DNA of 64,000 nucleotides from contig OZ249446.1 of the NCBI GenBank assembly GCA_965235115.1, positions 12,090,001-12,154,000 of the forward strand, in the 5' to 3' direction. The first letter of the stretch is position 1. Every line of letters starts with the position of its first letter. The notes below the pieces were generated by a model that was not told where the DNA came from, searched no databases, and saw nothing but the letters and a program-made list of their open reading frames with translations. The stretch is from Laetmonice hystrix. Lineage: Eukaryota. Below, in pieces: positions 13,885-59,755 of this stretch. Made by a program: the position numbers and the translations under genes.

Positions 13885-14964
13885 TTAATAGACAACACCA
13901 TGTTGTTTATTTGAAATATTTTGGTTCGTTACCACACGGTAATTCAGTCCCTGCTGAGTAAAACGACGCCACGTGACTTCAGGAATCTCGGGGAGGGGAG
14001 AACAGGGAGCCCATACCAACAGGCGGCACCAAGAGTCTCACTGCAGTGTTCGTTGGATGCATGTCAGTAGCATTTACATAATTAATATCTGATTATCTGG
14101 TACCTATAACCTACCTTTTACAAGATAGGTGTATTTAGTCACATGAGCCGTTAATGGTCCAAACAACTGCCACAGAGGAGGAGTCTACATGACTATGTTT
14201 AGTCTAATAACGCTGTCTGTCGGTATAAGTTACCCATTATGTCGAAGAAACAAAATCCACAGTGCTTCTGACATATAATAGCAAATTTGTGAAGTCCGCT
14301 TATACTGGACTTTGATAAATTCTTTCTAAGTAGAATTACTGCCGCGTTATCTCTCCTCAATTGCACCGATTCATTGGCCAGCCTAAATATAGGCATACCA
14401 TGCAGCCCACCTGCATGCCTCCCTGCTGTAGGCACGTAGGTGATCCGTGTAGACTGATAATTTATTAGACTAGGAATTTATGTGAACGTAGTGTGGGCGT
14501 GATGCGTAATGCGTACTGCGTAGTGCGTAATGCGTATTCATCAAAATCAATGAAAACTGTTGGTGTGATTCCATATGTGCGTAATGCGTGTTTTCATCGT
14601 TTTAATTACGCAATACGCAATACGGACACATGGATTCCTGGCTTTACAGTGGTGAACCAGGTAGACCTAACTGTGGCTGATCACGGGACCTTTCCCAGAC
14701 AGCAGGGGGCAGTTGTCATGTGATGTCGTTTTGACTTCAACCAAGCGGCAGGTGGGTTTATCGCCTGGTGCGTCCTTTGGGAGTTTCTCATGTGACACGC
14801 TGACACATTACGGCCTTTTGTGTGGAAGTACGATCTGGGGAAATCCTTGAGTACATTACAGAACAATCTTAAAGCCGACTAGGATTTGACACCTGCTATA
14901 ACTACCGATATTGTTGTTTCAGTTGGCGAGGCCTTCCTGATGTTCAACAGATCCACACGGCAAG

Positions 14965-16131
14965 ATGGGTATCCTGGCTTTTCTGGAGATCACATCCGGG
15001 TATTTGGCGGCCTTTGCCTCCAATATCATGGCTTCAATGGGCAGCGCATGCGCACAGGCCCTGCAGGAAGCAGTTCCAGCGTTCGAACTCAACCTTTCAC
15101 GATATGTTGTACAAACTCTCCTCTCTGCCGTTCTCATGATCGTCTCACGCCATAACGCAAGGCTTGAGAGACATCAGCTCAACCCTATGCTGCTTGCGGG
15201 CGTATTCAGCAACGTGTTTAACCTCTCTTATTACACAGCTTCAGCCATTCTCCCACTAGGCACGCAACTAGTGTTCACAAGTTTATTTCAAATACTCGCC
15301 TCTACCATTCTCAACCGAGTGGTCCTAAAGAAATCAATTCAGTGGCAGAAATTCATCTTCATGGCCATTGTCATTGTTGGACTTCTCTTTGTCTTACAAC
15401 CATCCTCTTCAAGTGATGGTTCTGGTCAGATCCGTAGGACCCCAGTCAGAAACTTCATCACAGCATATCCGCCTTTTGTGACGTCATACACGGCTGAAAT
15501 GACAAACGACACTGATAACCAACAGGTGGCAGCACCGCATGCGCCGCCAGAGTCGGACAGATCAATTGGGAAACAGATCTTAGGATATGTCCTCTGTGTG
15601 GTAGCCGCGTTTTCCTCAACAGGTCGTGCCACTGTGTACCGCGTGTCCCTTCCGACCGTTCCTATGAGCGTCCTCGGTTTCTGGGTAGGAATCCTTGGCG
15701 TTATTCCGTCCGTAGCGTTCATGTTCTTCTCTGAACAACCAACGATTGCACTGGCGCCCATCCAGTTCCTTATTCTTTTCGGACACAGCTTTGGGGCAGC
15801 GTCCTACAGCACCTTCAACATCTACGCCCAGCAGAAACTCTCGCCTGTCACGTGGGCACTCATGGACAACAGTAAGATTGTGATCAATTTTGTGCTGCAA
15901 TACACAGTGTTGGCGGGCATCAACCCGGGCCATGAGAACGTTTTGGAGATCGTCGGAGCAGTAATAGCACTCATTGGTATCGGTGGATTACCTATATTTG
16001 AGATTTTATCGGGAAACAGGGATCCGGCGACAGATTTGAATCCACCGATTGAGGAGAGGGAACGGATTTTGCCACTTAGAGAACTTATGGCGCCCAAGCG
16101 AATTGTCAAAAAACAGAACTCCACTAAATGA
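14965..16131 (+). CDS. Intronless EamA-domain drug/metabolite transporter (SLC35G-like), 388 aa
   Basis: Uninterrupted 1167-bp ORF with ~10 hydrophobic helices in two halves (CAQALQEAVPAFELNLSRYVVQ; YYTASAILPLG; FVLQP; YAQQKLSPVTWALM; INPGHENVLEIVGAVIALIG), typical of SLC35G/EamA proteins. Confidence 0.9.
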   Translation: MGILAFLEITSGYLAAFASNIMASMGSACAQALQEAVPAFELNLSRYVVQTLLSAVLMIVSRHNARLERHQLNPMLLAGVFSNVFNLSYYTASAILPLGTQLVFTSLFQILASTILNRVVLKKSIQWQKFIFMAIVIVGLLFVLQPSSSSDGSGQIRRTPVRNFITAYPPFVTSYTAEMTNDTDNQQVAAPHAPPESDRSIGKQILGYVLCVVAAFSSTGRATVYRVSLPTVPMSVLGFWVGILGVIPSVAFMFFSEQPTIALAPIQFLILFGHSFGAASYSTFNIYAQQKLSPVTWALMDNSKIVINFVLQYTVLAGINPGHENVLEIVGAVIALIGIGGLPIFEILSGNRDPATDLNPPIEERERILPLRELMAPKRIVKKQNSTK

Positions 16132-29473: not shown

Positions 29474-32168
29474 TTAATGGGTCGAGTTTTGGATCGGTTG
29501 ATTGATATTCATTGGTATTGACTACGTCCGTTTAAAGTTCGAGGTAAACATTATGTTTGAGGACTCTCTTTGTTAATCTTAATAGTCAAAGGGAAGTTGT
29601 ACTATTCTCTCGTAATTCTAGAAATGAAAAAGAAATTACACAGAGCACGGTGTGTACAGTAACATTTTCTTTATTGTGGTAATCGAAACGGGGTACATCT
29701 GAACTGTGGACAACACGCTGGTGTGGAGTTGTATTTTATACTCGGACATTTGGCACTCCGTTATAATGGACATTGTAATGTAACAAGCCACGATTTGCAC
29801 GGGAGACATGGGTGCCTATCAATCCCTCTAAAAGGAGCGAATTCGAGGGACGTGTCCATTTGGCATATTGTCTGAATTTATCAAGAAACGCATGCCGGGA
29901 GTTGGACGGCGTATTTGCACACCAATTTAAAGTGCACTGTCATATGGCCGTTGTAATCTCTCCTCCAAATAGTAATTGTAAAATGTATTTTTCTGTTTTT
30001 GGGGAAAAACTATTTTAAAAGGTTTACATAATATCACACGCTGCAATACAAAATTGTTCCCGACACGTATTTCCGGTGAATCAAAAAATATCACATTGCA
30101 ACAACGATTGTATATACACATAATACCTAGATACACATAATACCTAGATACACATAATACCTAGATACATAAGGACTTAATCTCTTTTAAATATATTTGA
30201 TGTACGTAGATGACCTGTGAGTGCGCTCCGTACCTACCTAGAGGGTTATAATAGATTATATTCTTTATCGTCTAGAATATCTCTACTACTACCTGTGTGT
30301 CATAACAAACATTTCCTGGACGAATAAATAGGAGTTTTGTATGTACAATATGCAAATATGTACAAATTATACATCATCTTTGACAACTCAGTGTACGTGA
30401 TAGAAGTTTAGGCGTAGCATTAACATAAACCAAATATTATTTTGAATCACAAAGTTTAGCAACTAGAATGTACGTCATACAGCCGACTAGCAATAATTTA
30501 TCAACGCGTCATAATTGGATTAAATGCACAGTACGTTCACATTGCTAGGTGCCTCATATTATCAGCAGAAGCCATAGAACAACCTCCGACATCGTATTCA
30601 TCATTTGTTTGCTCAAAAACAACCTAAATGTTCTTAAAGCAATGACTACTTCATTGCTTAAGAGAGAAAAGACTTCTGTTGGTTTATGAATCAATGAACC
30701 TTTTTTGCGAAAAGCTGTAACTTCTCTTTGAACACGGCGTCTACAGATACGTATTTACATGGTATGGCAGAACTAATCTCAATGTCATGACCTATATTAC
30801 TTGGCCATATTCGGCAGAGTTCAAGTGAGGACTATTGCATTTGTCTGCATTACTATACAGGCTGCCCTAAACGACCAAAACCTGTTAACCTGATAATCAT
30901 CTACAAAACTAATCTCAGAGATATAATACACCATCTTGGTCTCGGCATACCGTTCCTGCCAGAAAAAAAAGCTGCTTGAGATATAAATGCTGACGACCAT
31001 TTACTGCCAATTGTGTAAGGCAGCTCGTCGTAAAAGAAGCATTTTCAATCTTCATACTGTACATGAGACTTGCATTCTGTCTTTAACCCCATCTTCATCC
31101 ATACTCGTTTCTCTGTTAGGCAGATTCAGGACTGAGAAAGAAATATCCCAGGGCAGATTCGGTTATAGTACGGAGCGTTCCTTATAGCGTTTGTGGTGTT
31201 TTATCCTATCCTTCTATCAAAATTGTACTCCCTGAGATTTTTTAAAAAGGAAACGTTATTATTTACGTTTACAAAGGTTACCTTGCCTAGCCCCGGCAGT
31301 TGCTCGTGTTGGCCTGGTAGATCAACACTTAGGTTCTCGCTTAAATTTACAATACACGCTTCTGATTGGCTGGTCTCTAAGCAGACCTAATACTTCTGAT
31401 TGGCTGGTCTGAGCAGAGCAGCCAATCAGAAGTATTAGGCTTAATCTTAGGCAAGAGCTAACCTTTTAAGGGCTGTTAAAACACGGTGAGGAAGGGTAAA
31501 TTTGAAGGAGGGAAACCTCAAACCATTTTCCCCTATAATCTGTGCCACAACTACTGGAGCCTGATACCGTACAACTACCATGCTCTGTGTGACATTGTCC
31601 TGCCGAGTCATGGTACCGCACGACTGATAATAGCATAGCTCTCCCCGCCCAGACATCCTCTGAAATACCGACTAAAATAAATACTCTCCAAACCTCATAA
31701 TAGGGCCTGTTGGATGGACGGATCTTGATGTTAGGAAGGCTAAGCACGCTGGAATAAACACGCACAGACCAGCGCGTGTTGCCTCCGCGTCACGACGCTC
31801 AAAGGTTGGTCAGGCTTTGAGAAACTCTTTTTGACGTATAAGATGTCTAGTATTTAAGCCATTGGTTGTTATACACTGACCAAGTCACGAATATCGTTCT
31901 TGGTTAAGTAGTCATCTATGCGCACAGAAACATCCGTAGCTGCAAATCCAGTCCTTTCAGTCCTGCCTGTCACACATGTAGGCCTATGTATGGCGAAGCG
32001 AACTTTTCCTGGCTCCGTTGTCACGTCACCAACGCAGAAGTCACCGTGTGGGCGCGCGTGATTCTCGTAGCTCCGAGACTTACGGCGTTATGGGCCAGAG
32101 CAGAGATGGTGGTCGTAGTTCTGGCCTCCAGACCTCTAGATATTTGCGCCATGAAACTGCTGGCGGAT

Positions 32169-32438
32169 CTAGACTTTGTACAAGATGAACAGTTCGTCCG
32201 TCCGGTGGCCTTCTATGGACGCTGCCCTACAGTAGAAGTCGTTGGGACCGTAGTCCAGGACGTTGTAGATGGCCTTGTCAAGGTGTAATAACTTGCTTGA
32301 CTTGCGGAAGCTTCGCATCCGTTGTTTTCGGGACCGGTGTCTGATATTCTGGCTCGGGTGATCGCTTGTTGCTCTGATTGTCACACCATAGGACGCTGAA
32401 CTCAGAGGCATGACTGTTCGTTTGTCACGTAACCGTCG
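32169..32438 (-). CDS. Ig-domain gene, terminal coding exon
   Basis: 89 codons plus TAG after a strong polypyrimidine acceptor; contains the F-strand-like DFYCRA motif. Confidence 0.75.
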   Translation of the reverse strand, partial: RRLRDKRTVMPLSSASYGVTIRATSDHPSQNIRHRSRKQRMRSFRKSSKLLHLDKAIYNVLDYGPNDFYCRAASIEGHRTDELFILYKV

Positions 32439-35400
32439 CTGAAAATGGGGGAAAATAGAAGATATTTAATTTTAAAACATATTACAAATATTCCTAGAAG
32501 TAATCCATTCAGGTCCATAATGGAATGTGGAATGGAATGAGGGAACATAGACCTAGCATAGGTGCATTCATAAGTACCGCAAACTGTTTTGTGTCAGTAA
32601 AATTCACCCTGTGCTTGTTTTAGGGTTGTTATAACATGAAGTGATGAAATAATTATACAAAGTCGGACCTGGCTTTACAATGAAGTATAAGGCGATGTCT
32701 GGTATACGTCAGCCTTGCCATTTACCCCTCTCTGTTCTGGGAGTAAGCACCCCTGACCACATGTTTAGAGTCCATTGTTACAAGTACCAGTTTCATCGTC
32801 TGTCGTTTACATTTCTGCCTATTCCTACCGGCGATAAAACGAATAGAATACACAAAGACGTCTCGCACGACGGGGACACCCTTGAGGTAAAACTCTGTAA
32901 CCTCGGGTGCGGTCACTTGGCTGTTTTCATGTCATTCTCCTCATAGCTGTAGGGAACAGATTTTGTTGGGGGGCAAGAAGTTGTTGCCCTAAAAATCGAC
33001 GACCGATTTGCTAGCATCATAAAATCGGGCAAATTTCACCCGATCTTTTCGCCAATAGGCTACTGGCCGATTTTTCCCCGACGGATTGCCAAAAAAAACC
33101 TCAATTTAGGGGTGCATACCCCCCCCCCCCGACCCCCGCCTTCTACGGCTATGATTCTCCTCTATACTTTATTAAGGAGATCAATCTTTCCTAAAAAGAC
33201 ATTCCGTCACGTACCAAGAGCCGATATAGAATTCCGAGTTAGCAGGTAGGAGTCCCGGCGCCGGATGTACCAGCCATCCCTTCCTGTTGTATTGATATGC
33301 ATCACAGCAAACATCTGTACGTCAGGGCAGGCCTCGAATACATAATGCCAGAGAGGAAATCGGCCGAGCCGGGTTTCTACCCCTGATTGGCATGTATCAT
33401 CCGCGGTCGGCTTATAATATTTGACGTATAAAAACGAAATAGACGACGCTACGTCCGGACGAGCACGTCCGACGTCCAGTGTTGGAACGTCCTGTCTTTG
33501 TACGCGCAGGTACCCTGATCCCAGCGATTACTGTCCTTCAAAAACTCGATCCGATTGCCGTGTTTGACATTAATCGGGGGGTCCTCCCCCTCCTCCCACG
33601 CAGCCGGCCCTGTGTGTACACTACGACCACATTAATGACTACTTGAGCCTGAGGTACACTCCACTTGTTTTGGTATCCCTGGCACAACGGATCCACCTCA
33701 AATATTTGACCAGAAGACAGAAGAGACATTGAGTAAAAGAAACCGCGGGATGTCGTCAGGAATTTAATGTTACGTTTCCTATCCATTCGTCGCACCAACA
33801 ATCATAATATTTTGATACCAAAAGGCGCACTTTTTGCCCACCACTTATACTTCCCGGCTGAGAAGAAGTGGTGGTCGTTTTTCTGTGTGTAGAACTCTCG
33901 GTAGCCACCCCCGTATGGCCTTTCACATGACATGGTTCGAACAATGCCTTACAGGAAGCCAGATTACTGTCGACAATAAGCACCCTATACCCTACTAAAG
34001 AGCGGAGGTGGTTATTGTATACACACGTTTTAGCGCATCACTCGTTACATAGAGAGAACTTAAGTTCTTTTGTCACTAATAAATGGGTGGGATACAATCT
34101 TGTCGAAGGTGTCTGTTGGGCAGGCCCAAATACGCCTACATCTCTCGTGTTTGAATACTTGAATCTCATGTATCACCCAGCAGAAGGTCATAAAACTCCA
34201 CATGAGGTCTCTGCACAGATATACACAGAGATTCGTACAGATGATATAGTAGGCCTATATGAGGCGAAATATACATAACATATGCCTATAGGCTTCATAA
34301 ACTTAACCCACCACGTGTATAAATATAAATAGGAAAACTGGTGTAATCATCAGCCCTCGTCTATCAATGTTTTTCTATATCAGTCGGGGGGGACCTTATA
34401 GCCAAATGTCGTTACAGATTGGATTAAAGCACCAACAGGGTGGGGAAGTCTAATACTGCGGCATGAGTGAGTCCGCACAGACACAAGGAAGGAGCCTTTC
34501 CCGGCCCTGGTTGAGAGCCATACAAAGTCATTTCCTCCTTGCTGAGTGTACACATGGGGGTGGGGATAGGGCTACATGATTCAGTCCCTCTACGTCAAAC
34601 ATTTGTAGCAGTCAGAAAAACGATAATTCATGAGATATTCCGCTCTAATTTCAACATCTCGATCACATTCTCCAACACTTCGAGTCTCAATTATCTTTGG
34701 AATTATCTACGCCTTATGAAAACACAAACTATCTTAGGAAAATAGCATGAGGGGTTGTATTTTATATTGACAAACTCCCATCCAAGGGAGATTTATCCAC
34801 CTTGAAAGTAGGTTGTAAGTGGCCCCGTTTTACAATAAGTCGAGGGTTTGGTTCGTGCCCCTTAATTTACGGGCAAACTGAGGGGTCATGCCGGGTTAGC
34901 CGTGCTCCTCCTAGACCTTCTCCTCTTGTACATTCAATATTGTGTCTATTGACAGGTCCTTTCCACCTGAGATCTCGTTTTACAAGAGCCCATTGCTTGG
35001 ATTTAATGGACACCTGTCAATATGAAGGAGAGGTGAGGGCAAACAGACAGGTCTAACATAATGTCGGACAGGTAAAGCTATCTGACGAACTCATACAGCC
35101 GCAAGACGTACTCCTTGCCGTCTACTACAAAAGACAAATGGGAGAAATGCCTCCCAGTGTTATCCAGGTGTGGTAGTTTGGCTGAACATGAAGGTTAAGT
35201 TAAGGTCATCATCAAAGGTCCTTGCGATGGTTACAATTGATTCAGTGAATAGTTTGTTCCCGATTTCTCAGCCATATGAGTTCGTTGTTTCTTTCGACTT
35301 CCCACGAACACAAATTATGCTCGATTGTTCCGAAAATATATATTACAGATCGTCACATGTAAAAGAAAAAGGCTGCAAGGCATAGCCATGGGATTAAAGT

Positions 35401-37152
35401 AAAGTTTTTAAGGATAACACCAACCTCTTATAGTTTATAATCTCAAAAAGGCATTGAGATATCCTAAATGGTGTAGGTTTTAATTTTTTGATACTAGCAT
35501 TGTGGATCAGAGGATCAGATCTTAATATAACTTAACATTGCCCATCAGGGGATCAGGGATCATGAAGTTCAGCTCGGACGATTCTTCTGTGGTTTATCAG
35601 GAGCTAAGTTTGCACCTCAAGCGATGCAAACAGTTTCCTGGGAGAAAGAGAGAGAAAGAGAAAGAAAGAGAGAGGGGGTGGGAGAGAGGGGCGAGAGAAA
35701 GAGAGAGGGAGGGGTAGAAGGAGAGAAGAGGAGGAGAGAGAGAGGCGAGAGAAGGAGAGGAGAGAGAGGGTCATGACCCATGCACTGGCCGGCTGAAGTT
35801 CACACCCCACAACTCCCCCAATCTCTCCCTCTTCATGACATCTCATGGAACGCTGCTTCGCAAGGTGTTACGTCATGTGTAACAACATGAGGCACCTTTC
35901 AATGTACTCGGCCGTAGCCCTGGCTGTATACACTGGAGAGAGTGGGTCGTCCTAGTTAGGAAAAGATTATAACAGAAAGGACAATTGTACTTTTTTCAGC
36001 GATTGATTGTAAGGATGAGGATTACTTGTCTTAGAGCGAGGGTAGCAAGGAAACGTTCCCAATAACTAAAATATATCAAATAAAATAACAACAAAGACAC
36101 CATGAAACAGGTTTTTGTTGGAGATGCGCACTTTTAAATTTTCTTGTGGGGCCTGTTGGCACCTCTGCTTTTAATAACTCCTGCCCCTCTTTCAAAAATG
36201 TTGTCTTGGTGCATGGAACTGATTTTGTAAAGAAACCAATGAATGTCAGTCCCATGATTAGTGAATCTACTACCAGCTGTATAACACGTACCAGAGGTGG
36301 CCTTGAAGTGACAAAGGCTATCTCAAGTGGTTGGGAAGGGGTTGTTGTGGTTTGCAGTCAGAAAGGGCGGCTGCAGCCATTTTCGTACCAATCCGTGCGT
36401 ATCGTTGTCGATTAAACGGTGGTTCTTTGCTTGGATACTTGCGTGGGTTGTACAAGCCGCGCCCAATGCGACCGCATTTTGACGTGATAAAATCAGGAAC
36501 CAGCCCATGTGCCAAGGTCACGGTTAGCCGAAGCTTCTCTCTTGTCAATCATACACATAGATTTGCGCAGTATCTGTGGTGATATTTCACGCTATGGCAT
36601 AACTATTTTTATCCTGAAAACTATTATCCGCAGCATGGAGTTTCATGTATGCCTGTTGAGAACTGGAGAGGATGATTTACGGGTACCAAGATATGTAATA
36701 ATTATGAAGCCTAGATATTGGAATTTGTTACCGTGTGCTACCGCCTGATCTGGGTTATGCTATAGAAGACATGAGTTTCATAAAATGACAGGTCCTTTGA
36801 TAGAAGTAGCAGGGTGCGTTTCACACTACTGCTGCTAAGTTAATCTAACTCGTACTATCTTTCCCTCATACTGTCGTTCGGAAAGCAACGTTAATTTACC
36901 TAATTATGAGACTTGTTATGAGACTTATGAGACTTATATACTTGTTTATGTGGCATCACTGGTATGAGGTGTGAAGGAGCCTGCCGTGGGGTGTCAGAAA
37001 CCAAGAGAAAAACTCATTTCCTAATGTCAAGTTGAGCTGACATATACGTTCATTGTTTTCATCTGATGTATTCGTTAAAGGATTGAAGAGGGATGTTATC
37101 TCTCGAGGGTCGGTTACCATTGACTTATATAAATGTGTGATAAAGTTTGGCT

Positions 37153-37206
<54 letters not shown>

Positions 37207-38832
37207 GAGAAAGAGAGAGATATACAACGTGAAAAAGAAAGAAGAAAACAAACACCCAGAACATTCTATGTGGGACTACCCTGACGATAAAAGTTATAAT
37301 TGCCACACGCGCAGGCGCATTGTGTTATAACGAGACTTGTGGACCCTGACAAGGATGGATTGCCCGCCCGGTAGGGGGCACCACCGGCTCGGGTGACCAA
37401 CCGCGCCCCTTGACATGCGCGTGGGATGACGTCATCTTTTTCCACGCCCGTTTCGCCCCAGGAGGGCACGGGGGTGTTCGCTTCCTGGTGATGGGTAGGG
37501 CGCGTTCTGCCGTGTAATTACATTGTCATTCTGCACCTCAAGAAAGTGTACCCTATGACCCTTTTTGGAAGGCCGTGAGCTGATCGCACCGGGGACGCCC
37601 CACTAAGGTTTTCATTGAGAAACTTCGTACGTGGTACGCGTTTTATCATCCGAATATCGCTCTTATCAGCTGACGAATGGCTTCTCTAAATATAGGGGAA
37701 ACTTTTTTTACAAACCAGTCAAATTGCCATTTCATAGTTGACGTTTCACAGGAGGATAAAAGTCCAAACTTACATCATGAGCTGTGATCACATACAAGCA
37801 GCTCACGGAACAGGAAGGAGGTGCGTGTTATACAGCGACAGTTGAAATATCTTGTGCTGCTCCCGCCCTCCTCCACCCATCATAAGGCACGGTCGCTAGG
37901 TGTGATACCAAACGGTTCAGGGCGTGTCCAATAGTTCAACCCCGCAACATGGAGACACATCTTGCATCGCCCTAAACAATGCTAAGTGACAAGAATGACA
38001 GAGCTCAAGTTTGACTCCCTGGGCTGGGCTCCACAACCGATTGACTATGTCCACCGCCTAAACCGCGCCGAAGACGGCACGAGCGCCACCTGGTGTGAGA
38101 TTCAGACCACGTGGCCACACGTTAAACACAGGCATGTCGTCGTGCTGCCCTCTCTCACCATGAGGTCGCCATAGCCAGCGCACGCGCCAGTCGTAAGCAC
38201 CGGCAGCCGATGTTAAATTACAGTTACTATATATGGCAGCGTTCTTTATTAATACAACCCTCCCACTCAATTCTTTCTCTCCGTATATTATTTCTTTGAT
38301 CTCAGGTTCCCTTTTGTTTATGGTACCGTACAAGGCCGTGGAAATACGCCCTTTATAGTACCTTTCTTCGCCACACCCACACAACACCCACAACAATCCA
38401 CTTCCTTTCTTGGTAAAACGAAATTTTGGGAGGGGGGGGGGGCTGGGGGTTATTCTAAACTTAGACCGACACACGCTTTATTCTTAGAATTATCATGAAG
38501 CTTAACTCCTCCAGACTGCCCAATTTTGACAATGGAAAGCATGGTGGAAGGTGACATCTAGTTCCATTTGATCAAAGTTGGGCAGATTGGCAGAAGAGAT
38601 TTTGATAAAGTTGTTCACTCACATAGAAGGAGATCATTGGGATGTCCGACACCTCGTAGCCCCGCTTGGCCCGACATTTGATGGTGACTGACTCGCCCCT
38701 GTGCATCACCCAATACTTGGGCTTCACGTTAATACTGAACGGTGGTTCCCGTTTGTTCGGTTTCGGGTACTCGATGGCCGTGGCGTACGTCGCTCCCAAC
38801 ACGCATGCGGCCAGGATGTACATGGAGAGCAT
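32169..38832 (-). CDS. Secreted single immunoglobulin-domain protein, 159 aa, two coding exons: complement(join(32169..32438,38623..38832))
   Basis: Exon A (acceptor tttcag|a just before the ATG; donor TAT|gtgagt) encodes signal peptide MLSMYILAACVLGATYATA plus Ig strands A-C (...GESVTIKCRA...PMISFY). Exon B (acceptor cttctattttcccccattttcag|) is in matching phase 0 and encodes ...KLLHLDKA...DYGPNDFYCRA...ELFILYKV*. The paired Cys are residues 53 and 140; no TM helix. Confidence 0.75.
32942..33153. mobile_element. hAT-type MITE (212 bp) in the Ig-gene intron
   Basis: TIR CATAGCTGTAG / CTACGGCTATG flanked by a perfect 8-bp duplication ATTCTCCT (32934-32941 and 33154-33161). Confidence 0.85.
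35640..35770. repeat. GA-rich polypurine low-complexity tract
   Basis: Nearly pure A/G over ~130 bp. Confidence 0.9.
37148..37220. repeat. (GA)n microsatellite
   Basis: Direct reading of the sequence. Confidence 0.95.
38623..38832 (-). CDS. Ig-domain gene, first coding exon (signal peptide and N-terminal half of the Ig fold)
   Basis: 70 codons bounded by a canonical acceptor (38835-38834) and a GTGAGT donor (38622-38617). Confidence 0.78.
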
Positions 38833-41800
38833 TCTGAAACGAGGCATAAACGGTGACGTCACACAAGTGCGTTCAAAGACAGGCGAAGGGCGAAGGGCGA
38901 AGGCGAACTTTAAAAAGAATCCATGTGGGGGACTTTTTCTTAAAGGAAAAGAGTTTGTTTTCAGTAATTAATCATGAAAGGCGAGGTAAATCTACGATAA
39001 CATCGTTTGAAACGTTAGCTTCGTGTTAATAAAATTATTGATAAATAAATGATAACGTATAAATATCGGAGCATTGGAGACGTTAGCATGAATACAGCAG
39101 TGATCGTGTGAGTAGAGGCAAAAGTCTTCACTTAATTTTCCAATAATTGAGACAAATGGAATTCTATGTTTAACTGCATGGTCAGAAAATAATGATGTAT
39201 ACAGGCTTAATGGGTATATATAGACAATATGGTCAATGATACATAGCCTACATGTAGTTGGGACATTCATGTTTGTGGAAAGTCGAAAACTGGATTGATG
39301 AATTGTGGGTTTCTGAAGGTTTGCGGCAGTTAAAATTTACATTGCCCCATGACGAAACCAAAACAATAATTTCAGAGTGATATATTGTACTTAATTTGTA
39401 CTTAATTCAAAGTGGTATATTGTACTTTATTTGTGTAGATATTATACATGTGTGTGTGGTTGGTTCTGGTCTCTCATGCTGAGTTCACTGTAAATGTATT
39501 TATATACGGTATCTTATTTATACCACGACATTTGGTTATAAATAGGCCTATGTGTTTATTCGAACTACAACTATCCACTTAGGAGATTTAATAGGGGCAC
39601 CCCCCCCCCCCCCTCCAGAACCCCCAGCCACCCGACTGACCTGAAAAATACTGTAGGGTGGGTATATGATCGAGTGAATATCCTACAATAGTAACGATAC
39701 AAATGCTATACCAAAGGTAGGGTCTCGTATTATGTGGCCCACCCAGCATTAGTTACCCCCTCGGTCATCTCGAAGAGGGCGACTGGGGGTCAGGAAGGGT
39801 CATGACCAGAGAAGGGTAAACTTGTAGGAGTGTTGACGGGGCGGGATGCGTTGACCCATGTCCACATACGATGACAACCTCATTGAACCGTGTACAAGAG
39901 GTTAGCTTTGTATGATAAGTCAGGCCACCCCCAATTAACGCAGATAATACAGGTGGTATATTCATAAAGACGTATACATGTATATTAAGGAGGTTGTACC
40001 ATGCCAAAAGTTGATTATCAAACACTTCAGTCACTTTCCAATATACTGTATCTTTGAAAGTGGAGTAAAGAAAACAGGAGCAACAAAAAGTTATAATATG
40101 CTGTATGTGGGGTGGGGTGGAGGTGTGTGTGGGGGTGTGGGGGTGTTGGGGGAGGGGTCTGTGGGGAGCGGCGGGTGTTTTACAAGGTTGCTTGCTGCAT
40201 GTCACCAATATCCACACTAGGGTATGTTTGCGGAAGACTCATCAACCACAGCATTTCAAACATGACAGTCACAGTCCGTCCCTCTCACTTGATCAATCTG
40301 GATGGAGAAGGAAGACGAAGAGGCCGAGGGGTGTAGAGGGAAGGGGGAAACTGCAACGGGAGGAAATGGGTGGTTATCTACTTCCGCTGACAACTGTTGT
40401 CTGCGGTCACAGTTTGCAGTTCTGGCGCCTATCCTCCGTTTGATGAGTCAATAGTTCCGATCACGGCCACCAGGTGGCTTAATCGTCTCTGACTCATACC
40501 TTTAGAAATTTGGATGAAACCTCGTAATTGGCCAAAGACGGATGTGATTTCTTGCTGAACCGGTGCAGCTGAATAAGCATTACGTGGGTGCCCAACACGT
40601 GTACATGTTTGCCCTGCTCCTGCCCGGAGGCGACGGCTTTTATCAAATGATCACGTTTTACGTGGTCTTAGGATCGGGTGAAATCTTTGGGGAAACTGAT
40701 CTTTTCAATGTACGTCAGCTACCCGGGTCACACAAAACGTCGTAAAACGTTTTATTCATATATTATAACACGCTTAATAAACATTCTTTTCTAGTTGCTA
40801 TATCCTTGCTGGTTTTGTAAGAAGATGTAAGAAATCATGGTCCCGCCCCAGGTCAACAGAAAAACCTGTGATCCGATCCGCCCTCTCTACCTACTAGTGG
40901 TATTGGTTTCTCTGAGTTAGCATTTCCGAGGTGAAAGCAGCGTTTTTCCTCGCCATGAACCCCACAGGAAAAGGCCAAAGGTTTAGGTAGAAGGATGGCG
41001 TGGCCTGCCAGCCACCTTTTAAACTATTGGTGTGAGGTACGACACCAGCGGTATGCCATTTGGTCCTTAATTGATACAAGATGAATCAGATGTCACTCCA
41101 AATGTCGGATAAGATCGCCTTGCGTGGGCGGAACATACATACCGCCTCAATAGATAAACCTTTATTTGTGTGTGTACCTGCATGAATGACATATAGCGAA
41201 TCTACCTGAGCAGATAACCTGACCGGCCAGGCCAGATGTTAAAATACTGGCTCGTCAGGGCCAGGAAGTGATTGTTTAAGTTGTTGGAGTGGTGAGTAAT
41301 GGTGCAGGGGCATGTTTTGATCTAGAAGACAGCGGCGACCCACGGAAGCTTATATCATGTAATAAGACCGGAAATGACGTCACGTCCATTAGCCTACATG
41401 ACGTCACAAGCAAACGTGACCTCCAGGAAGCATATTCAGCCGCCCACCCAATGATATAAACTCTATAGGACCACGTAAAGAAACAAGACTTGCAGAACTA
41501 AACTACGAAATCAGAAATTACAGGCACCATTCAACATTAGCATGCTCCTTGCCACGGTTCCTCATGGATTGTTTCAAAACACTGTAGCCTAATTGGATGG
41601 TGATTTGTAATGGGTGACCTGCTCAAAGCATCCGACCACCCACGCACAAAAACCTTGTGTCCTTAATTATACACTTTACCATCCTATGACGAGGATATAT
41701 AGATGCTCTGGTTGAGGTGCTCTTCCGTGACTAACTATACCGATAAAAAACACGACTTGCTGCGAAGATTACCAACTCCTAATGTTATGTGTAAGAAGGC

Positions 41801-44800
41801 GCTTTAAAGAGGACTTTGGCGAGGATATCGATATGGAAACATGCTCACCTAGGGTTATGACCCGGAGTTGAATGAAGGTGAGAAGAGAGAAAAAAAACAC
41901 AATAGTTTTCCCACTTCTTCTTACTTTTCTCGTTTATTCAACTGGAGGAATAGTTGAGTTGATCTTAGCTGAGCTGAGCTGAGCTGAGCTGCTACTCAGC
42001 GATGCGAGTGTGAATCCAGAGTATAGCGGCCTAACATACTTTTTACACGATTTTGAAGTGTTTGAAAGAAATGCTGGCATTGCTAACAGGATAACCGTGG
42101 TTGCAACCATTGCAGACCTACACTCGCTCAATGTGGGGACTTAATGTTAGAGAAAGGCCTTTCCTACTCCACTCCACACGCACTCCTTTAGCTCAAGGTG
42201 AAAAGGTGATTGAAAAACAGGAACGGAATAAGATTTTCTTTTCTATATAAATTGGCGTACCCACCAGAACCCGACTAAAAGTGGTTGTTTTGGAAAAACT
42301 GCGCCATGTTGGCTGGGACACGGCATGTTTGACTGGGTGTACACGGGATGGTAGGAATGTAGTTAGGATGTGTGTATGTGTACAGCTCGGTGTGTTTATT
42401 CGGACAGCGGGCTGAGGATTGGATGGGAAGGACACGTGCCCGTAGCCTCCCCTCCCCCCAAACACTACCACCAACGGCAAACTGAGGCACGCTTCAACTG
42501 GAATGTGGACACCACTGGTCATGAACCCTGAGGCGTGGCTGCAGGACTCGTATTCATGGTGGGCAGGAAAAAATTGATCACGGAGGGGCTGGGGGTTGGA
42601 TGGAAGAGGGATGGGGCTATAGGGAGATTTTGAAAGGGGGTCCACGGAAGCAACCTGGTGAAAAGAGGACCAAACATGATCAATTCAGAAAGCTCTATAG
42701 TAAAAAAACAATAATAACGAAAACAACAAGAAAAGATGGAGTTTCTATCCACTGATTGCACAACCATTAAACTCCATCCACGCTCCTACTCCGTGCCATT
42801 GTCTACGAGTTGGTGATGACATCGCGAGATGGTTCCCGCTTCAAGCACTCTGTGCACAGATCTGATAGCACACGACATACGTCGTACTACAGCTGATCAA
42901 CGCAACGGAAGCGGAAGTCCTCTGCTTTGACATTGGGCTTGACCTTGGCGCCATCCCCTTCAACCAATCACCGTACTGGGACCAGAGAGTGTCCGCCAAT
43001 CAGGAAACTTCAGACAACAGGCTGGAGAAGATTTTGTCCTGATTCAGAGGAAATGCTCCACCAACCACCATAGCCTCGACATCAAATGAGACAGAGGATA
43101 AGCTGACTTCATCATGGTCACCAATATCGTTTGTTCCGTAGTCATACGAAGAAGCGTATCGGCCATGTGGATCTGGATGATAGCGGCCCAAAATCGCACT
43201 GAGGTTTCGCTATCGAGTTACAGCGTTATCTAACGTTTAATGCATTACTGGAGAGAGTTCTATATCATTTTGGTACGGTACCCATGCACCTACAAGGTAT
43301 TGCCAATCTATATCAACAACCAACTTCAGTAGGACCGAGGTTGGTCACGTGACTGAAGGTGGCGCGGTGCACTCTGGCCATTATCTGGAGTGGTCCGATG
43401 TTGTAGTTTGAGGCGAGTGTTTTATGACGTCCCAACAGGCGCATGTTAAGTGAGACGAAGAAGCGTCAACATTTGGCTAACGCACCTGTCATCATCTGCT
43501 CGCTGATAAGTTATCCGATTTATGGGACGCCGGGATATACGAAGATAAATACGTGTTGAGGACTAATAATAGTTAGCGCGTACCATTTATAACTGTCGCG
43601 CATTCAGTATATAAGCGTCACTGTCCGCCTACCAAGAACAATATAACTTTGTACTTTCTCTGTATAATGACCAAATCTTGGGCAAATCGACAAAGATAAT
43701 AAGGGTGCAAATGACGGGAAATGCCCAAGAGTACAGCAAGACGATGTATAGGCTCCTCTTCGTGAACCCAGGTTATTTTATGTTTGAGGTAATTCCAGCG
43801 TAATTAGAACCCGTAATGAAGATGTATGTTGTAGATAGGACCGATAGCATTGTTTTCACGCAAAGTCATAATCAGGATCGAAATGGATAGGAATCGCGAC
43901 TGTCAACCCACTCGTGTACATCTGACGATGAAAACGTCAAAATAGAGTAATGAGTTCACGTGTAATTACCCGAACAGATCTTTTAACTTTGAGGTTAAAT
44001 AATTTATAATGGCGCTCCTTGATATATCGGTTGGTGTTGCTGTTTGTGTATATGGTTATGGAGCACCTGCGCATATAGACCTGATGTCCTATATATAGGT
44101 AAAGAGGGTTGTTAAAATGTTGACACCACGCAGGTCAATACGACCCAGTGGCCATGCTCTGCTTTACGGCCGCATGCGCAGAATCGAAGCCGTTTCAGAA
44201 TGGCTTGTTTTTACCCCATAAACAAGGGGGTTGATGGGATTATTTTTGGCGGGAAACGCGCGCTGTAGCGAACTTGCACGGGGGTGGGTAGGGGGTGAGT
44301 GATGGGTAATTAAGATACGACCCGGGTTGTTGAGTGCTCCCAACCCCAGTGTACGCCATCAAAAGATTGTCCATGCATGGATCATCTAAAAATAGTTTTT
44401 TTCGTCACTGGTCAGCTTGACCCATGCGCACTGGCATGCTAGGACCTTGGCGCGGTTCTGGCCTTTCTTCTTTATAGGTTAATGGGCCGGGCAACGCGGC
44501 CGGGTAAACAGGCTGAAAGAAAACGAAAGTAAAAATCAAAATATTTTGTTTTCCTCGCCTGATTAACATATTCTTTGTCATCATACCAGTTACTTTTTGT
44601 ACCAGGCCGACAGGAACCTGAAGAAAGGGGATTTCTAACAGGTTAGCAACCCGTCTCATATCCATGTAGCCTAAAGAAGCGAAAAGTCAGCAATTCTTCG
44701 GTTTCTGTAAAATGATCTTATCGTAAAAAGTAAAACTGCAGAGATTATAAATGTTTGACATATCTAATCAAGGGATATTAATACATAACATTCCATCCTT

Positions 44801-45499
44801 GGCGGGAAGGAAAAGACATCTCTGAGCGTTGACTTCTCCGCCTTTGTTAAAGTGATCTGAGGCAATGGTCAAGTATCTTACTACGCAGATCGAGTTTCCC
44901 CTGACCATCGTATGTTTCTTTTTGTGATGCAAATATATCCGATTCTGAAGAGCTATTTTCGGCTCTCCACTGACCCATAGACAACAACAACAGTGTGGTG
45001 CCTTTTTATCAACTAGGGCAGTGTTTTGGCGGGAAACGTGAGGGAAGTATCCCAGCGTGGGAAGTGGGTCATACTCGCAATGTTTTCAATGAGAGGTCAG
45101 TGACACATATATAATCTGGGATTGCATGTCAAGGCACCGTCTTGGAGGTAGGACAACACAGAAAGAATTTTACTACGACAATAAAAATTGCACGAGAAAA
45201 TACGTTAAGACGAGTTGAAAAGCTGTCTTTCGAAAAAAAAGTAACTTTTTCATTCGCGGTCGAAGTTATTACTTCAATATGCCATATTCTAATTGGTTCC
45301 TAGTTTGACTGTAAACTTCGAATGGTTTTTAAAAGGAGAAGACCCAGAGATGGTGTATCATTCTTTAAATACTGGTTCAGCTTGTAACAATATTTAGTTG
45401 GCTCCTTCATGATCATTAAGTGGCGGATACAATACCATTCTCATGGTATTTTCACTGTTCTTTTTAAATTGGACTAAATGAAATGTGACATTTATCCAT

Positions 45500-45519
45500 T
45501 CTCTGTCTCTGTCTCTCTG

Positions 45520-45568
<49 letters not shown>
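45500..45568. repeat. (CT)n microsatellite
   Basis: Direct reading of the sequence. Confidence 0.95.
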
Positions 45569-45571
<3 letters not shown>

Positions 45572-48500
45572 CCCTCTCCCCAACCATTAAAACTTGACGT
45601 CATGTCGAATAGTTATATCTTTCATATAACGTTGGAGTCTTTTCTTCACGGGGTTTTCCTTTAAGCTTCATTTAAACTCACGTTAGCTTCCACCCGGAAG
45701 GTATGTGTCAATCTCCTTTGAAGGGAAAGCATCTGTTGAAGGAGTAACCCTAGCATAAAATAAGAAATGCCTGCTGATAATGCTGATGGCCTTACACCAC
45801 AGGGGAGCGCGATTGTGTTGAGCGTGATGACCAAAACATCACATCCTTGGGCGTCTTTGACATGTGACCTTGTCGGAATGAGGTCATGTCATCGTGCAAG
45901 GCGAAACCGTTCCAGCCGTGACGCGTAACGAGGCAAAACATATATCACTCTCTATTACGTAAGGTTGTCATCGTGATTCATAGAGGAAATCAACAACATT
46001 TTTTGGTGGATAACCTTGAAATGCGACCACTGAAAGAAGTACTTCCAAGGCGCACTTTTTTTTAGGAATGCTTCTTTCGTAACTTTGAGATTACGCAATG
46101 GTTAAGTGTGAGATGTCGTCGAGCCCGCTGCTCTCCATACGAAGGCACTTCCCTGGGAACCATGGAGATGTCACGATATAATCACAACACACAGTCATGC
46201 CAGGGGCGCTGGCATTCAAAGTCAACCCCCCGCACCTTTTTTCCTCACTTTGTTCCTCCACATCCATCCATACTGTCCAGACCCTATGCGGAACTGGGCT
46301 GTCAGGGCTGGGGGCGAGAAGGTTGAGATTGACGCGGCAAGTCTCGCGGCAAATGTCGGCTAATGAGCTGCAATTGTGGTCGGTCAGCTGCATAAGTGAT
46401 GCAATCGCTCCTGACCCATATAACATTATGCGCAGTATATTTTTGGTTTATTTACATAGGTGTCACGTTTCAAAAGGTGCTGCGATTTCAGCAGATTAAA
46501 GTTGAAATCAGTATAGTCACCTGCGACATAGTCTCATCTATATCTCAAATCTCTGAGAGCTTATATAACCTGACGGCGACGATCCTTGGTAAACATGCAT
46601 CTTGATTAACTATCGACTTCCCATTCCTCGTATAGTGCAAGAAGCAACCTTTTTTTATTGCCTTACATTTTGTCGATTGGGGAACAGATGTGCAAATATC
46701 AATAGACGCGCGGTGTCCAGGATATTTGAGACTATCCATACTTAAAAAAATTCTTGTATATAAACACACCTACAAATGGTGAATATGTAATGATTATTTT
46801 GACGCTGCCGAGGTATTCGCATGCCTATACCCTATAGAAGGCCAGGACTTATTGTCCAGAGAGTGGTGCATTCCATCATGGGCAGCTTATTTTGTGTATA
46901 TGGCCTCCCGCCGCCGGGTACCCCCCCCCCCCCCCCCACCCCCACCCCCACCCCCCGTTTACAGCGCAGGTATATTAGCCACGCTGCCGCTGACATACCA
47001 CGACATACTTCGGGTCTGACCCCGACGAGTAGATCCATCATTGAATGGTATCACAAGCTTGCAGCACATTGCAGCCTGCCTGGCGTTTTGACATCCACCT
47101 GACTGCCTTTAGGCCATAGTTATTTAACAGTTCGTTTAACGAATAGTTTGGGGAAGAGGAAAACGTGGGCTTCGAAGACATAGTACCTAGATACTACAGA
47201 AAAATAGACCGTTATTTTATTTTTCTAATTTAAACCTTTTTTTACGATTTGTATTATAAATATCGAAGATATGTCTATAGATGTTGAAAAACAATAAATA
47301 ACTTTGTCTTAGATTTGTCCCCCCTCCCCAGTTTTGTTGTTGCCATGGTAAATTCAATTTAGCTCGAGCTCCTGGTATTTCCCCGTAGTTTAAAATAATA
47401 TACAGAACCGATGCACCGGAAATGTTAATAAGTTCACATACTTGACTTTATCATTATTTTAACATCTCGGAATTAACATGGCCACACACATTTTCGGCGG
47501 GAAACACAAAATAAAATTGTTTTCATGGATTTCTTTACTTGAGGGTCCCATTTCCGGAAGGCATGTAAACCGCGCCGTCATATAAGTATGGCCTTACCTA
47601 TCGCATAACACCCTGGCATGCTCGCGGATGTCAAGCTACACCTGCTGGCCACCTCCACATTATACACAGGTTTAACCTTTTTGAACTTTACAGAAGTATT
47701 GCAATAGTTATTGCAAACATGCACGATTGCATTGTCGGCATTGCTGGTGAGAACACGCAAAGGCCCTTTGTAAAGGCATACCTTCCGTATCGTGGTATTT
47801 CTAAAAATCCCTGCTGATATTGTAAAGTTGATGGCGTTTCAAGCAATGGTTATATATCAATGCCATTTTACTGTATACAGTCTGTCCCAATAAAAATGAT
47901 AGTCTCTGCGTCATTGTCAAAAAGAGATACTGGTTGTGATCAGTAATGCGTGACCCTGTCAACACCAAACTTGCTGAGAGTTATTTAGGGGGATCAAAAT
48001 TTATGTTCAACTCCAACTTCAAAATTCAAAATTCGACAATCCTCTAAATATCTAAGTGTCTTTCACACCTAAAGTTAGACTATCATTTTGGGGGGGACAT
48101 ACTGTAGGCCTATATACCATGCATGTAGGTTTCGTTTGCTGATTTGTAACTTTTGATTCCCAGTCCCTTTAAGAAGCGAATCCAGGCACACTAGTGCTGT
48201 GACGGAGTTCTGTATAAACGTATGCCTGCACTGGGGCGGAGCGGGGTGGGGTGGGGGCGCAGGGCTACGGGGCACGTGCCCCTAGACACTTAACAAAATA
48301 GGCTTTAAAAAGATTAAGAATCGAAATCGCGTAGGGGTACACGGAGAGGAATACGTGTGTGCCGCCCTAGGACCCCCCCCCCCCCCGACACCTTGCTGGA
48401 TGCGGACGTCATGCCTCAGAGCGGGAGAGTACCATAACCAACGATTTCACATAGAGAATCTCTGTCCTGACATTGTACAAACTCAGCAATGACCCCAGCA

Positions 48501-59522: not shown

Positions 59523-59755
59523 TGTGAACGCGTGCTCTTTGATCGTTGGTTTAGTAACGCTCCAATACTCTAACCACAGCCCCGCCCTTACAGAACCTCT
59601 TGATCATTTGCCATCTTGGCGACAAGTAAGTCCTTGATCGTACAGTGTCACTTGCACGTTGTCAGCCCACACACTCGGATACATACATACATACTTACAT
59701 ACACATACAAGACGCTCTGTGACAGTCAACTAGCAAGATTTTCTAAAATTCCTAT

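What the first reader, a model, noticed from the sequence alone, without database searches (positions are those of the whole stretch)
32169..38832. Hidden gene: small secreted, highly basic single-Ig-domain protein split by a 6.2-kb intron
Seen: two ORF fragments join in phase 0 through canonical splice sites into a 159-aa protein with a signal peptide, one Ig-like fold (TIKC...DFYC, Cys 87 residues apart), Phe in place of the usual C-strand Trp, and a long Arg/Lys-rich insert (RRLRDKR...NIRHRSRKQRMRSFRKSSK). It has several dibasic or furin-like sites (NKR, RDKR, RSRK) and no TM or GPI segment. Known: stand-alone secreted Ig proteins (e.g. nematode OIG/ZIG types, ImpL2-like binders) act as ligands or modulators, and basic patches typically bind heparan sulfate. 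Inference: an uncharacterised extracellular signalling, matrix or defence protein, possibly proteolytically processed. It lies beside >20 kb of apparently gene-free, motif-rich upstream DNA, as developmental regulators often do. This is the best candidate for a novel system in the window.
Basis: partly seen in the sequence, partly recalled or inferred. Interest (0 to 1): 0.75.

Follow-up and report, generated by a model that had tools for sequence, protein, structure and literature searches.

The report
Unannotated secreted single-Ig gene in a worm
The two ORF pieces form a real, conserved two-exon gene for a small secreted protein with one antibody-like (Ig) domain. It belongs to a family missing from protein databases and is a solid but fairly ordinary new orphan member of the huge Ig superfamily, with unknown function.

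Summary
On the minus strand, 38832-38623 and 32438-32169 join in phase 0 through GTGAGT and Y-tract/AG sites into 159 aa.

The gene is real. Exon 2 has homologues in at least seven other sources. In all six contigs read, similarity starts exactly at an equivalent acceptor, and the homologues end at the equivalent stop. Exon 1 has a 59%-identical homologue that stops at the donor.

A relative yields a 177-aa protein (P0010) from an intron-less contig that reads ...DIPMISFY|RRLADRK... Genomic contigs of the same species carry the intron there. An in-frame stop lies 3 codons before its ATG, so the protein is complete and not part of a receptor. The window protein aligns to it end to end at 46% identity. 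dN/dS between two relatives is 0.07.

The Ig fold is supported at moderate confidence. AF2 of P0010 gave pLDDT 70, and Foldseek returned 237 PDB hits, nearly all Ig domains. ESM features and a PDB profile hit agree, but no Pfam Ig model matches.

The dibasic "furin" sites are not conserved. The basic insert is a lineage-specific D-E loop, with exon-2 net charge running from +17 to -1 across the family. Function is untested. No RNA runs exist for this species.

The scan holds no earlier finding of this family on other DNA.

The parts
38776..38832 (-). Start codon and predicted signal peptide (MLSMYILAACVLGATYATA | IEY). The cleavage site is inferred from the A-x-A rule.
   Evidence: The Met and ATYA(T/A)A-IE are conserved in P0006 and P0010. 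No SignalP run was possible.
38833..38847 (-). Possible 5-codon N-terminal extension (MPRFR) from an upstream in-frame ATG. It would add a positively charged n-region.
   Evidence: It is not conserved: P0010 has a different 9-residue extension and P0006 has none.
38623..38775 (-). Exon 1, mature part: Ig strands A, A', B (with Cys53) and C (DIPMISFY).
   Evidence: P0006 is 59% identical, E 4.5e-20. The PDB profile search hits Ig B-strand regions, with FcRL5 at E 7e-4. Strand assignment follows the AF2 model of the orthologue.
32439..38622 (-). Intron of 6184 nt, phase 0, GTGAGT...TTTTCAG. It contains GA/CT microsatellites and a high-copy repeat near 33011-33057.
   Evidence: The intron position is conserved in six relatives' contigs. 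The intron is absent from contig L013.
32169..32438 (-). Exon 2: strands C', D, the D-E loop, E, F (with Cys140) and G, plus the TAG stop.
   Evidence: Exhaustive HMMER hits P0001, P0002, P0003 and P0005 and the profile hits P0007-P0009. The homologues end at the equivalent stop. dN/dS is 0.068 between two relatives.
32295..32369 (-). Variable, Arg/Lys/His-rich D-E loop insert (TSDHPSQNIRHRSRKQRMRSFRKSS).
   Evidence: Its length varies by about 20 residues among homologues. Net charge of the exon-2 product ranges from +17 to -1. It is disordered in the AF2 model (residues 106-130 of P0010).
29670..29675 (-). First canonical AATAAA downstream of the stop, implying a 3'UTR of about 2.5 kb. This is inferred only.
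   Evidence: The relative's contig has at least 2.4 kb of unspliced sequence after the stop. Variation is low across 31000-32508.
38854..38861 (.). Perfect CRE palindrome TGACGTCA, 22 nt upstream of the ATG.
41375..41406 (.). Pair of perfect CREs 24 bp apart, 2.5 kb upstream of exon 1. Further CREs lie at 37427-37434 and 45595-45602.
   Evidence: One search found 6 in the window against 0.73 expected, and no shuffle of 100 reached 6. One search shows the flanks differ, so these are not copies of one repeat.

Best explanation
SHOWN: This is a real, single-copy, two-exon protein-coding gene on the minus strand. Its CDS is 38832-38623 plus 32438-32169, giving 159 aa. It belongs to a family that is kept under strong purifying selection in several marine animals. 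These are probably polychaete annelids, according to other notes of this scan. The family is absent from annotated protein sets.

SUPPORTED BY MODELLING OF A 46%-IDENTICAL ORTHOLOGUE: After an N-terminal signal-like segment, the protein is one divergent I-set-like Ig beta-sandwich with strands A A' B C C' D E F G. It has the canonical B-F cysteine pair, Phe in place of the C-strand Trp, and a disordered D-E loop of variable length that is strongly cationic in this lineage.

INFERRED: The protein is secreted as a soluble single-Ig binding protein, acting as a ligand, co-factor or decoy. It is comparable in kind to C. elegans OIG-1, Drosophila Noktochor or vertebrate IL-18BP. The best-conserved stretch, the C-C'-D edge (DIPMISFYRRLxDxxxxMPLSSxSYGV), would be the recognition surface. 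The cationic loop would add lineage-specific affinity for anionic matrix or cell surfaces. The cluster of CRE motifs at its 5' end suggests control by bZIP factors (CREB/ATF).
For: Gene and splice:
- Exon-2 homologues start at the same acceptor in L003, L006, L007, L010, L011 and L012, and the homologues end at the equivalent stop.
- The exon-1 homologue P0006 has the same Met, and its similarity ends at ISFY|VS.
- P0010 (177 aa) on contig L013 reads straight across ISFY|RRLADRK. L003-L005 are 99.7-99.9% identical downstream but carry an intron there.
- An in-frame stop lies 3 codons before the ATG of L013.
- The joined window protein against P0010 gives 46% identity over 168 aa, E 1e-53, with no break at the junction.
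- For L010 against L011, 34 of 44 differences are at third codon positions and dN/dS is 0.068.
- GC3 is 0.80 and 0.63.
- Both exons are single copy in the 627-Mb genome.

Fold:
- AF2 gave pLDDT 70.4 and pTM 0.55 with Ig strand order.
- Foldseek against PDB gave 237 hits at E <= 1e-3, nearly all Ig domains among the 50 listed.
- Swiss-Prot hits were the Ig domains of IGFBP7, IGFBPL1 and OIG-1.
- Atlas shape hits were mostly I-set clusters, with TM up to 0.81.
- ESM features scored 0.94 and all 10 of the best family-bearing hits were in the Ig clan.
- The exon-1 profile hits Ig B strands in PDB.

Regulation: 6 CREs against 0.73 expected, 5 of them within 8.2 kb around exon 1.
Against: - There is no RNA evidence in this species, because no RNA run is on record.
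- Whether run ERR14707600 is RNA was not stated. That is inferred from the missing intron.
- The window's own joined protein could not be folded or sent to Pfam, because it has no reference. All fold evidence comes from an orthologue.
- Only one of five AF2 models was confident. A second run on the mature part reached only pLDDT 52, although its weak Foldseek hits were again almost all Ig domains.
- No Pfam Ig family matches, even at E <= 10.
- The exon-2 profile finds no Ig protein in PDB.
- Secretion, cleavage, binding partner, the role of the cationic loop and CRE function are all untested.
- The h-region could also act as an uncleaved signal anchor.
Confidence: 0.7

Rival explanations
1. 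The gene is real, but the protein is a cationic defence effector. It would be an antimicrobial or microbe-coating Ig protein that acts mainly through its Arg/Lys-rich loop, not a ligand or decoy.
For: The mature protein has net charge +16 and pI 10.2. Loop length and sequence evolve fast, as in many immune effectors. The family seems lineage-restricted.
Against: The charge is not conserved: exon-2 net charge falls to +2 and -1 in L012 and P0008. The Ig core is under strong purifying selection (dN/dS 0.07). The gene is single copy with no expansion, unlike most invertebrate immune effector families.
Confidence: 0.15
2. The hydrophobic N-terminus is an uncleaved signal anchor. The product would then be a type II membrane protein displaying one Ig domain, not a secreted protein.
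For: The segment through ATYATAIEY is unusually conserved for a signal peptide. AF2 draws one long helix over residues 7-35 of P0010, running past the predicted cleavage site.
Against: The hydrophobic core is only about 16 residues and contains Thr, Tyr and Gly. A textbook A-x-A site follows it in all three species. AF2 usually models signal peptides as helices.
Confidence: 0.1
3. The two exons are part of a larger gene, such as a receptor or multi-Ig protein, or in this species they are spliced to other exons.
For: A tttcag|A acceptor-like site sits just before the ATG. No RNA data exist for this species.
Against: The relative's contig has an in-frame stop 3 codons upstream of its first ATG and a stop after exon 2. 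The start Met and the stop are conserved. The exhaustive HMMER search found no longer protein carrying exon 2 apart from a chance tandem-repeat hit.
Confidence: 0.04
4. There is no gene: these are chance ORFs with chance splice motifs.
For: Neither piece gives a significant Pfam hit (only ICAM_N at E 0.26). The first word-indexed protein search gave nothing.
Against: All the comparative evidence above argues against this.
Confidence: 0.01

Closest known systems
C. elegans OIG-1 (one-Ig-domain secreted protein; Swiss-Prot Q9N5Z2)
   Same: Small (137 aa), with a signal peptide plus a single Ig domain and no anchor. It is structural hit rank 6 in Swiss-Prot models, E 4.7e-5, TM by hit 0.56.
   Different: Only 17% identity in the structural alignment, and no sequence-level relationship was found. 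OIG-1 has no cationic D-E insert. Its synaptic role cannot be transferred.
Drosophila Noktochor (NKT), a small secreted Ig-domain protein (PMC10877950)
   Same: The same kind of molecule: about 19 kDa, a signal peptide plus one Ig domain, secreted and acting on other cells through a candidate receptor.
   Different: No homology was tested or shown. It is cited only as a functional analogue.
IL-18-binding protein / poxvirus YLDV-IL18BP-like soluble decoys (PF22009)
   Same: These are the nearest clusters by protein-language-model features, with score 0.94 and 181 of 256 shared features. They are also secreted single-Ig proteins of 150-200 aa.
   Different: PF22009 does not match P0010 even at E <= 10. 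IL-18BP is, to my knowledge, known only from vertebrates and poxviruses. This is a resemblance of type, not family membership.
C-terminal Ig domain of IGFBP7 / IGFBPL1 / KAZALD1 (IGFBP-related proteins)
   Same: These are the best Foldseek and Atlas shape matches: E 5e-6 to 1e-4, and rmsd 2.4 A over 105 residues.
   Different: Those proteins carry N-terminal IGFBP and Kazal domains. Here the CDS is complete with the Ig domain alone.
I-set Ig domains of cell-adhesion proteins (NCAM Ig1, neuroplastin/basigin Ig, MyBP-C C1)
   Same: Same strand topology and B-F cysteine pair. PDB hits gave TM by target of 0.60-0.75.
   Different: Phe replaces the C-strand Trp. The E-F turn is longer (D-Y-G-x-N-x-F-Y-C). 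There is a 25-45-residue D-E insert. No Pfam I-set, Ig_3 or V-set model matches.

Membership tests
Immunoglobulin superfamily (Ig-like beta-sandwich, I-set type) | Seven-to-nine-stranded Greek-key beta-sandwich | tested here: met
   The AF2 model of orthologue P0010 has pLDDT 70.4 and strands A A' B C C' D E F G. Foldseek gave 237 PDB hits at E <= 1e-3, nearly all Ig domains among the 50 listed. Atlas I-set clusters gave TM up to 0.81. Caveat: this is an orthologue, not the window protein, and the second model reached only pLDDT 52.
Immunoglobulin superfamily (Ig-like beta-sandwich, I-set type) | Conserved Cys pair in strands B and F | tested here: met
   Cys53 (TIKC) is conserved in all 3 exon-1 sequences. 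Cys140 (FYC) is invariant in all 8 exon-2 sequences. The disulfide itself was not measured.
Immunoglobulin superfamily (Ig-like beta-sandwich, I-set type) | Invariant Trp in strand C | tested here: not met
   All three exon-1 sequences have ISF(Y), with Phe at that place.
Immunoglobulin superfamily (Ig-like beta-sandwich, I-set type) | D-x-G-x-Y-x-C (tyrosine corner) before the F-strand Cys | tested here: inconclusive
   The family consensus is L-D-Y-G-x-N-x-F-Y-C. An aromatic residue (invariant Phe) is at C-2, but Asp and Gly are shifted by two residues.
Immunoglobulin superfamily (Ig-like beta-sandwich, I-set type) | Significant match to a Pfam Ig model (I-set, Ig_3, V-set, ig, C2-set) | tested here: not met
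   No Ig family matched at E <= 10 on P0010 or on the window's two pieces (only ICAM_N at E 0.26).
IL-18BP-like (PF22009) | Match to PF22009 | tested here: not met
   No hit at E <= 10. The only link is an ESM-feature resemblance of 0.94.
IGFBP-related proteins (IGFBP7 / IGFBPL1 / KAZALD1) | N-terminal IGFBP and Kazal domains preceding the Ig domain | tested here: not met
   The complete CDS is 159-177 aa with only a signal segment before the Ig domain, and an in-frame stop lies upstream in the relative's contig.
Neuropeptide / prohormone precursor | Conserved dibasic cleavage sites flanking conserved short peptides | tested here: not met
   RDKR, RSRK and NKR are not conserved among homologues. 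RDKR lies in the C-C' part of the fold, RSRK in the variable loop and NKR before strand A.
Secreted protein (classical signal peptide) | Cleavable N-terminal signal peptide and no other membrane anchor | not testable with these tools
   An n/h/c pattern with A-x-A is present and conserved. There is no second hydrophobic segment or GPI-like tail: the protein ends ...FILYKV. No SignalP tool was available.

The most novel reading that the evidence does not exclude
The family is an annelid-restricted, bZIP(CREB/ATF)-inducible secreted cytokine-like ligand or decoy. It would be a functional analogue of IL-18BP or OIG-1 that arose independently. Its conserved C-C'-D edge would bind a receptor or a soluble factor, and its fast-evolving cationic D-E loop would tune retention on heparan-sulfate-like matrix.
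Probability: 0.15. Interest if true: 0.55.

Novelty: new member of a known kind. Interest (0 to 1): 0.35.

Why it matters
The finding adds a conserved, selected and so far unannotated small gene to a worm genome. It also defines a new orphan branch of the Ig superfamily that standard Pfam models miss.

Small secreted single-Ig proteins are often ligands or decoys, as with OIG-1, Noktochor and IL-18BP. The gene is therefore a reasonable candidate for an extracellular signal in annelids.

It also shows that such genes can be recovered from ORF fragments in metagenome and run assemblies. It does not open a new kind of biology by itself.

Tried and rejected
- Pfam on the two window pieces found nothing.
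- The word-indexed protein search with the 98-aa open frame of exon 2 found nothing, although relatives exist. The blank was a sensitivity artefact.
- The ESM Atlas search on the exon-2 piece alone gave only noise.
- No RNA run is on record for this species. The junction could therefore not be tested here. I used read laying only for DNA variation, on 4501 letters that avoided the microsatellites.
- P0004 (451 aa) from the HMMER search is a tandem-repeat chance hit.
- Exon 1 is not present on the short relatives' contigs.
- DNA of the 321-kb contig that carries P0006 was not available. Exon linkage could therefore not be shown in a third species.
- Two JGI metagenome scans found nothing.
- MAFFT repeatedly laid the exon-1 fragments over exon 2. 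I tested whether this reflected an internal repeat, and hhalign says no, with probability 0.2%.
- The PDB profile search with exon 2 gave only a chance ERAP2 hit.
- Paper searches for the assembly accession and for the peptide DIPMISFY found nothing.
Pfam, AF2 and Atlas were therefore run on the orthologue P0010 instead.
Full report
**1. The observation**

On the minus strand, an ATG at 38832 opens 70 codons that end ...TTC TAT|GTGAGT, with the last coding base at 38623. A strong acceptor, TCTTCTATTTTCCCCCATTTTCAG|, precedes 89 codons and a TAG, spanning 32438-32169.

Joined in phase 0, the two pieces give 159 aa. The features are:
- Cys53 and Cys140, 87 residues apart.
- Phe in 'ISFY'.
- The quoted Arg/Lys-rich stretch.
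- A mature part with pI 10.2 and net charge +16.

The intron is 6184 nt.

**2. Is it a gene?**

First searches gave no lead.
- Neither piece gives a significant Pfam match.
- A first word-indexed protein search found nothing.
- Both exons are single copy in the 627-Mb assembly.
- No RNA run is on record for the species. The three holders are DNA runs of one sample.

The exhaustive HMMER search with exon 2 then found four short ORF-type proteins at 41-51% identity: P0001, P0002, P0003 and P0005. A profile search added P0007, P0008 and P0009. These are prokaryote-style ORF calls on short eukaryotic contigs from run assemblies, marine metagenomes and one NCBI assembly.

In every contig I read, protein similarity begins exactly at a pyrimidine tract plus AG that is equivalent to window position 32438. 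The contigs read were L003, L006, L007, L010, L011 and L012. The homologues end at a stop equivalent to the window's. Upstream of the acceptor the DNA is AT-rich and unrelated.

Exon 1 found one homologue, P0006, at 59% identity and E 4.5e-20. It has the same initiator Met, and its similarity ends at ...DIPMISFY followed by 'VS', as expected from a GTnAGT donor.

**3. The junction**

The 90%-identity cluster of P0001 holds a second member, P0010, of 177 aa. It is encoded on contig L013 from run ERR14707600. There the codons for ...DIPMISFY run straight into RRLADRKTIMPLSS....

Genomic contigs L003-L005 are 99.7-99.9% identical to L013 over 2.1-2.7 kb, from the acceptor through the region downstream of the stop. 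They carry intron sequence immediately upstream of CGCCGCCTC. L013 is therefore a spliced, cDNA-like copy of the same locus, and it proves the predicted exon 1 to exon 2 junction in a relative. A retrocopy is unlikely, because L013 stays colinear with the genomic locus about 1 kb beyond its only AATAAA.

An in-frame stop lies three codons before the first ATG of L013. The product is therefore a complete small protein and not a piece of a receptor.

The window's joined protein aligns with P0010 residues 10-177 at 46% identity and 67% positives, E 1e-53. Apart from one residue in the A'-B region, the only gap is an 8-residue one in the basic loop.

**4. Selection**

Two related exon-2 sequences, L010 and L011, differ at 44 of 255 positions. 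Of these, 34 are at third codon positions. dN is 0.066, dS is 0.98 and dN/dS is 0.068. Most amino-acid changes fall in the D-E loop.

In the window, GC3 is 0.80 for exon 1 and 0.63 for exon 2, against about 0.45 at codon positions 1 and 2 and in the intron.

Contigs of the one DNA sample show no variant in exon 2. That alone is not significant (P = 0.11). They show only 3 of 36 variant sites in 31000-32508, which covers exon 2 and the presumed 3'UTR, against 33 sites in the adjoining 3 kb of intron (P about 5e-4). This is weak supporting evidence, because it comes from one sample and from contigs rather than reads.

**5. Fold**

The joined window protein has no reference, so I did not send it to any tool. 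I used the orthologue P0010 instead.

AF2 with a five-row alignment (A7) gave mean pLDDT 70.4 and pTM 0.55. The model has strands A, A', B, C, C', D, a disordered segment at residues 106-130 (the basic insert), then E, a short E-F helix, F and G.

The fold searches agree:
- Foldseek against PDB gave 237 hits at E <= 1e-3. Nearly all of the 50 listed are Ig domains, including neuroplastin and basigin Ig, MyBP-C C1 and NCAM Ig1 (TM by target 0.75).
- Swiss-Prot models gave the Ig domains of IGFBP7, IGFBPL1 and KAZALD1, and C. elegans OIG-1.
- AFDB clusters and Atlas shape searches were dominated by Ig and I-set domains, alongside a few bacterial beta-sandwich proteins. One I-set cluster matched at TM 0.81 and rmsd 2.3 A.

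Two independent lines point the same way. ESM features of P0010 place it next to Ig clusters, with a best score of 0.94 and all 10 of the best family-bearing hits in the Ig clan. The closest are IL-18BP-like single-Ig decoys. A profile of exon 1 hits the A'-B strand region of FcRL5 (E 7e-4), CD22, Fc receptors and antibody light chains.

There are caveats.
- Four of the five AF2 models were poor.
- A second run on the mature part reached only pLDDT 52, although its weak Foldseek hits were again almost all Ig domains.
- No Pfam Ig model matches P0010 even at E <= 10.
- The exon-2 profile finds no Ig protein in PDB.

I put the Ig-fold reading at about 0.9.

**6. What is conserved and what is not**

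Conserved features:
- The signal-like segment with A-x-A|IE.
- The B strand (S-x-T-I-K-C-R-A-K).
- The C-C'-D stretch (DIPMISFY-RRL-x-D...MPLSS-x-SYGV-x-I).
- Strands E, F and G (K-x-L-x-L...Y-x-x-L-D-x-G-x-N-x-F-Y-C...F-x-V-x-K).

Features that are not conserved:
RDKR aligns with ADRK, GDRR, KED, DRD and GHDA, and NKR and RSRK also vary. RDKR lies in the C-C' part of the fold and RSRK in the variable loop.
- The cationic insert. It varies by about 20 residues in length, and the net charge of the exon-2 product runs from +17 to -1.

Processing into peptides is therefore unlikely. High basicity is a trait of this lineage, not of the family.

**7. Mechanism (inferred)**

The most economical reading is a secreted, soluble single-Ig binding protein.

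By analogy with other IgSF proteins, the best-conserved contiguous surface, the C-C'-D edge, is the likely partner-binding face. This rests on my own knowledge that the GFCC' face is the usual IgSF interaction surface. The cationic D-E loop would add affinity for anionic matrix or cell surfaces in some lineages.

Known molecules of the same kind are OIG-1, Drosophila Noktochor (a secreted Ig protein of about 19 kDa acting on other neurons; PMC10877950) and IL-18BP. Membership of any of these families is not supported.

The rival readings and my odds are:
- A cationic defence effector, about 0.15.
- A type II anchored form, about 0.1.
- Part of a larger gene, about 0.04.
- No gene at all, 0.01.

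**8. Regulation (a lead)**

The perfect CRE palindrome TGACGTCA occurs 6 times in the window against 0.73 expected, and none of 100 shuffles reached 6. Five of the six lie between 37427 and 45602, around exon 1:
- One in the intron at 37427.
- One 22 nt before the ATG.
- A pair 24 bp apart, 2.5 kb upstream.
- One further upstream at 45595.

Their flanks differ, so they are not copies of one repeat. It is untested, and the transcription start is unknown.

The large upstream ORFs carry no Pfam domain above its cut-off. That does not prove the region is gene-free.

**9. Taxon and novelty**

Other notes of this scan call the genome a polychaete annelid. I did not test this. The homologues come from marine metagenomes and run assemblies, which fits.

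The exhaustive search of 1.84 billion representative proteins found no annotated full-length relative. Two JGI metagenome scans found none either. Paper searches found nothing.

The family is thus unannotated and, as far as these tools see, lineage-restricted. In kind, however, it is one more secreted single-Ig protein.

Verdict: a real gene and a new member of a known kind, of modest interest.

Noticed in passing
window 37427-45602 (sites at 37427, 38854, 41375, 41399, 45595) and 15479: There are six perfect CRE palindromes TGACGTCA against 0.73 expected by shuffling. Five cluster around exon 1 of the gene, including a pair 24 bp apart, and their flanks differ.
   Followed up: partly
window 14965-16131 (+): A 388-aa single-exon ORF matches the EamA-like transporter family (PF00892, E 2.7e-14). 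It is probably a real intronless or large-exon gene.
   Followed up: partly
window 31393-31432: A short element with an 18-nt inverted repeat (cagccaatcagaagtatt / aatacttctgattggctg) has a summed contig depth of about 5,000-16,000 against about 60 for its flanks, so it is very high copy in the genome. It lies inside the presumed 3'UTR. A second high-copy piece lies at about 33011-33057 in the intron.
   Followed up: no
window 61246-63800 and 57896-59523: A 30-bp minisatellite has about 84 copies and produces long spurious ORFs in all frames. A (CAGT)n-type satellite of about 1.6 kb lies nearby.
   Followed up: no
L013:1-79: The 5' end of the relative's spliced contig begins with an open frame ending ...MQQQQQQQQPLEQLLAREHL*. 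It could be the tail of an upstream gene merged into the contig, or a uORF in the 790-nt leader.
   Followed up: no
window 38833-38847: An upstream in-frame ATG (MPRFR-) has a weak Kozak context. Just before the conserved ATG there is also an acceptor-like tttcag|A, which could mark a 5'UTR intron.
   Followed up: partly
L010:224-481: P0005 (52 aa) is an under-called ORF. The contig carries a complete, intact exon 2 of 85 codons with the conserved acceptor.
   Followed up: yes
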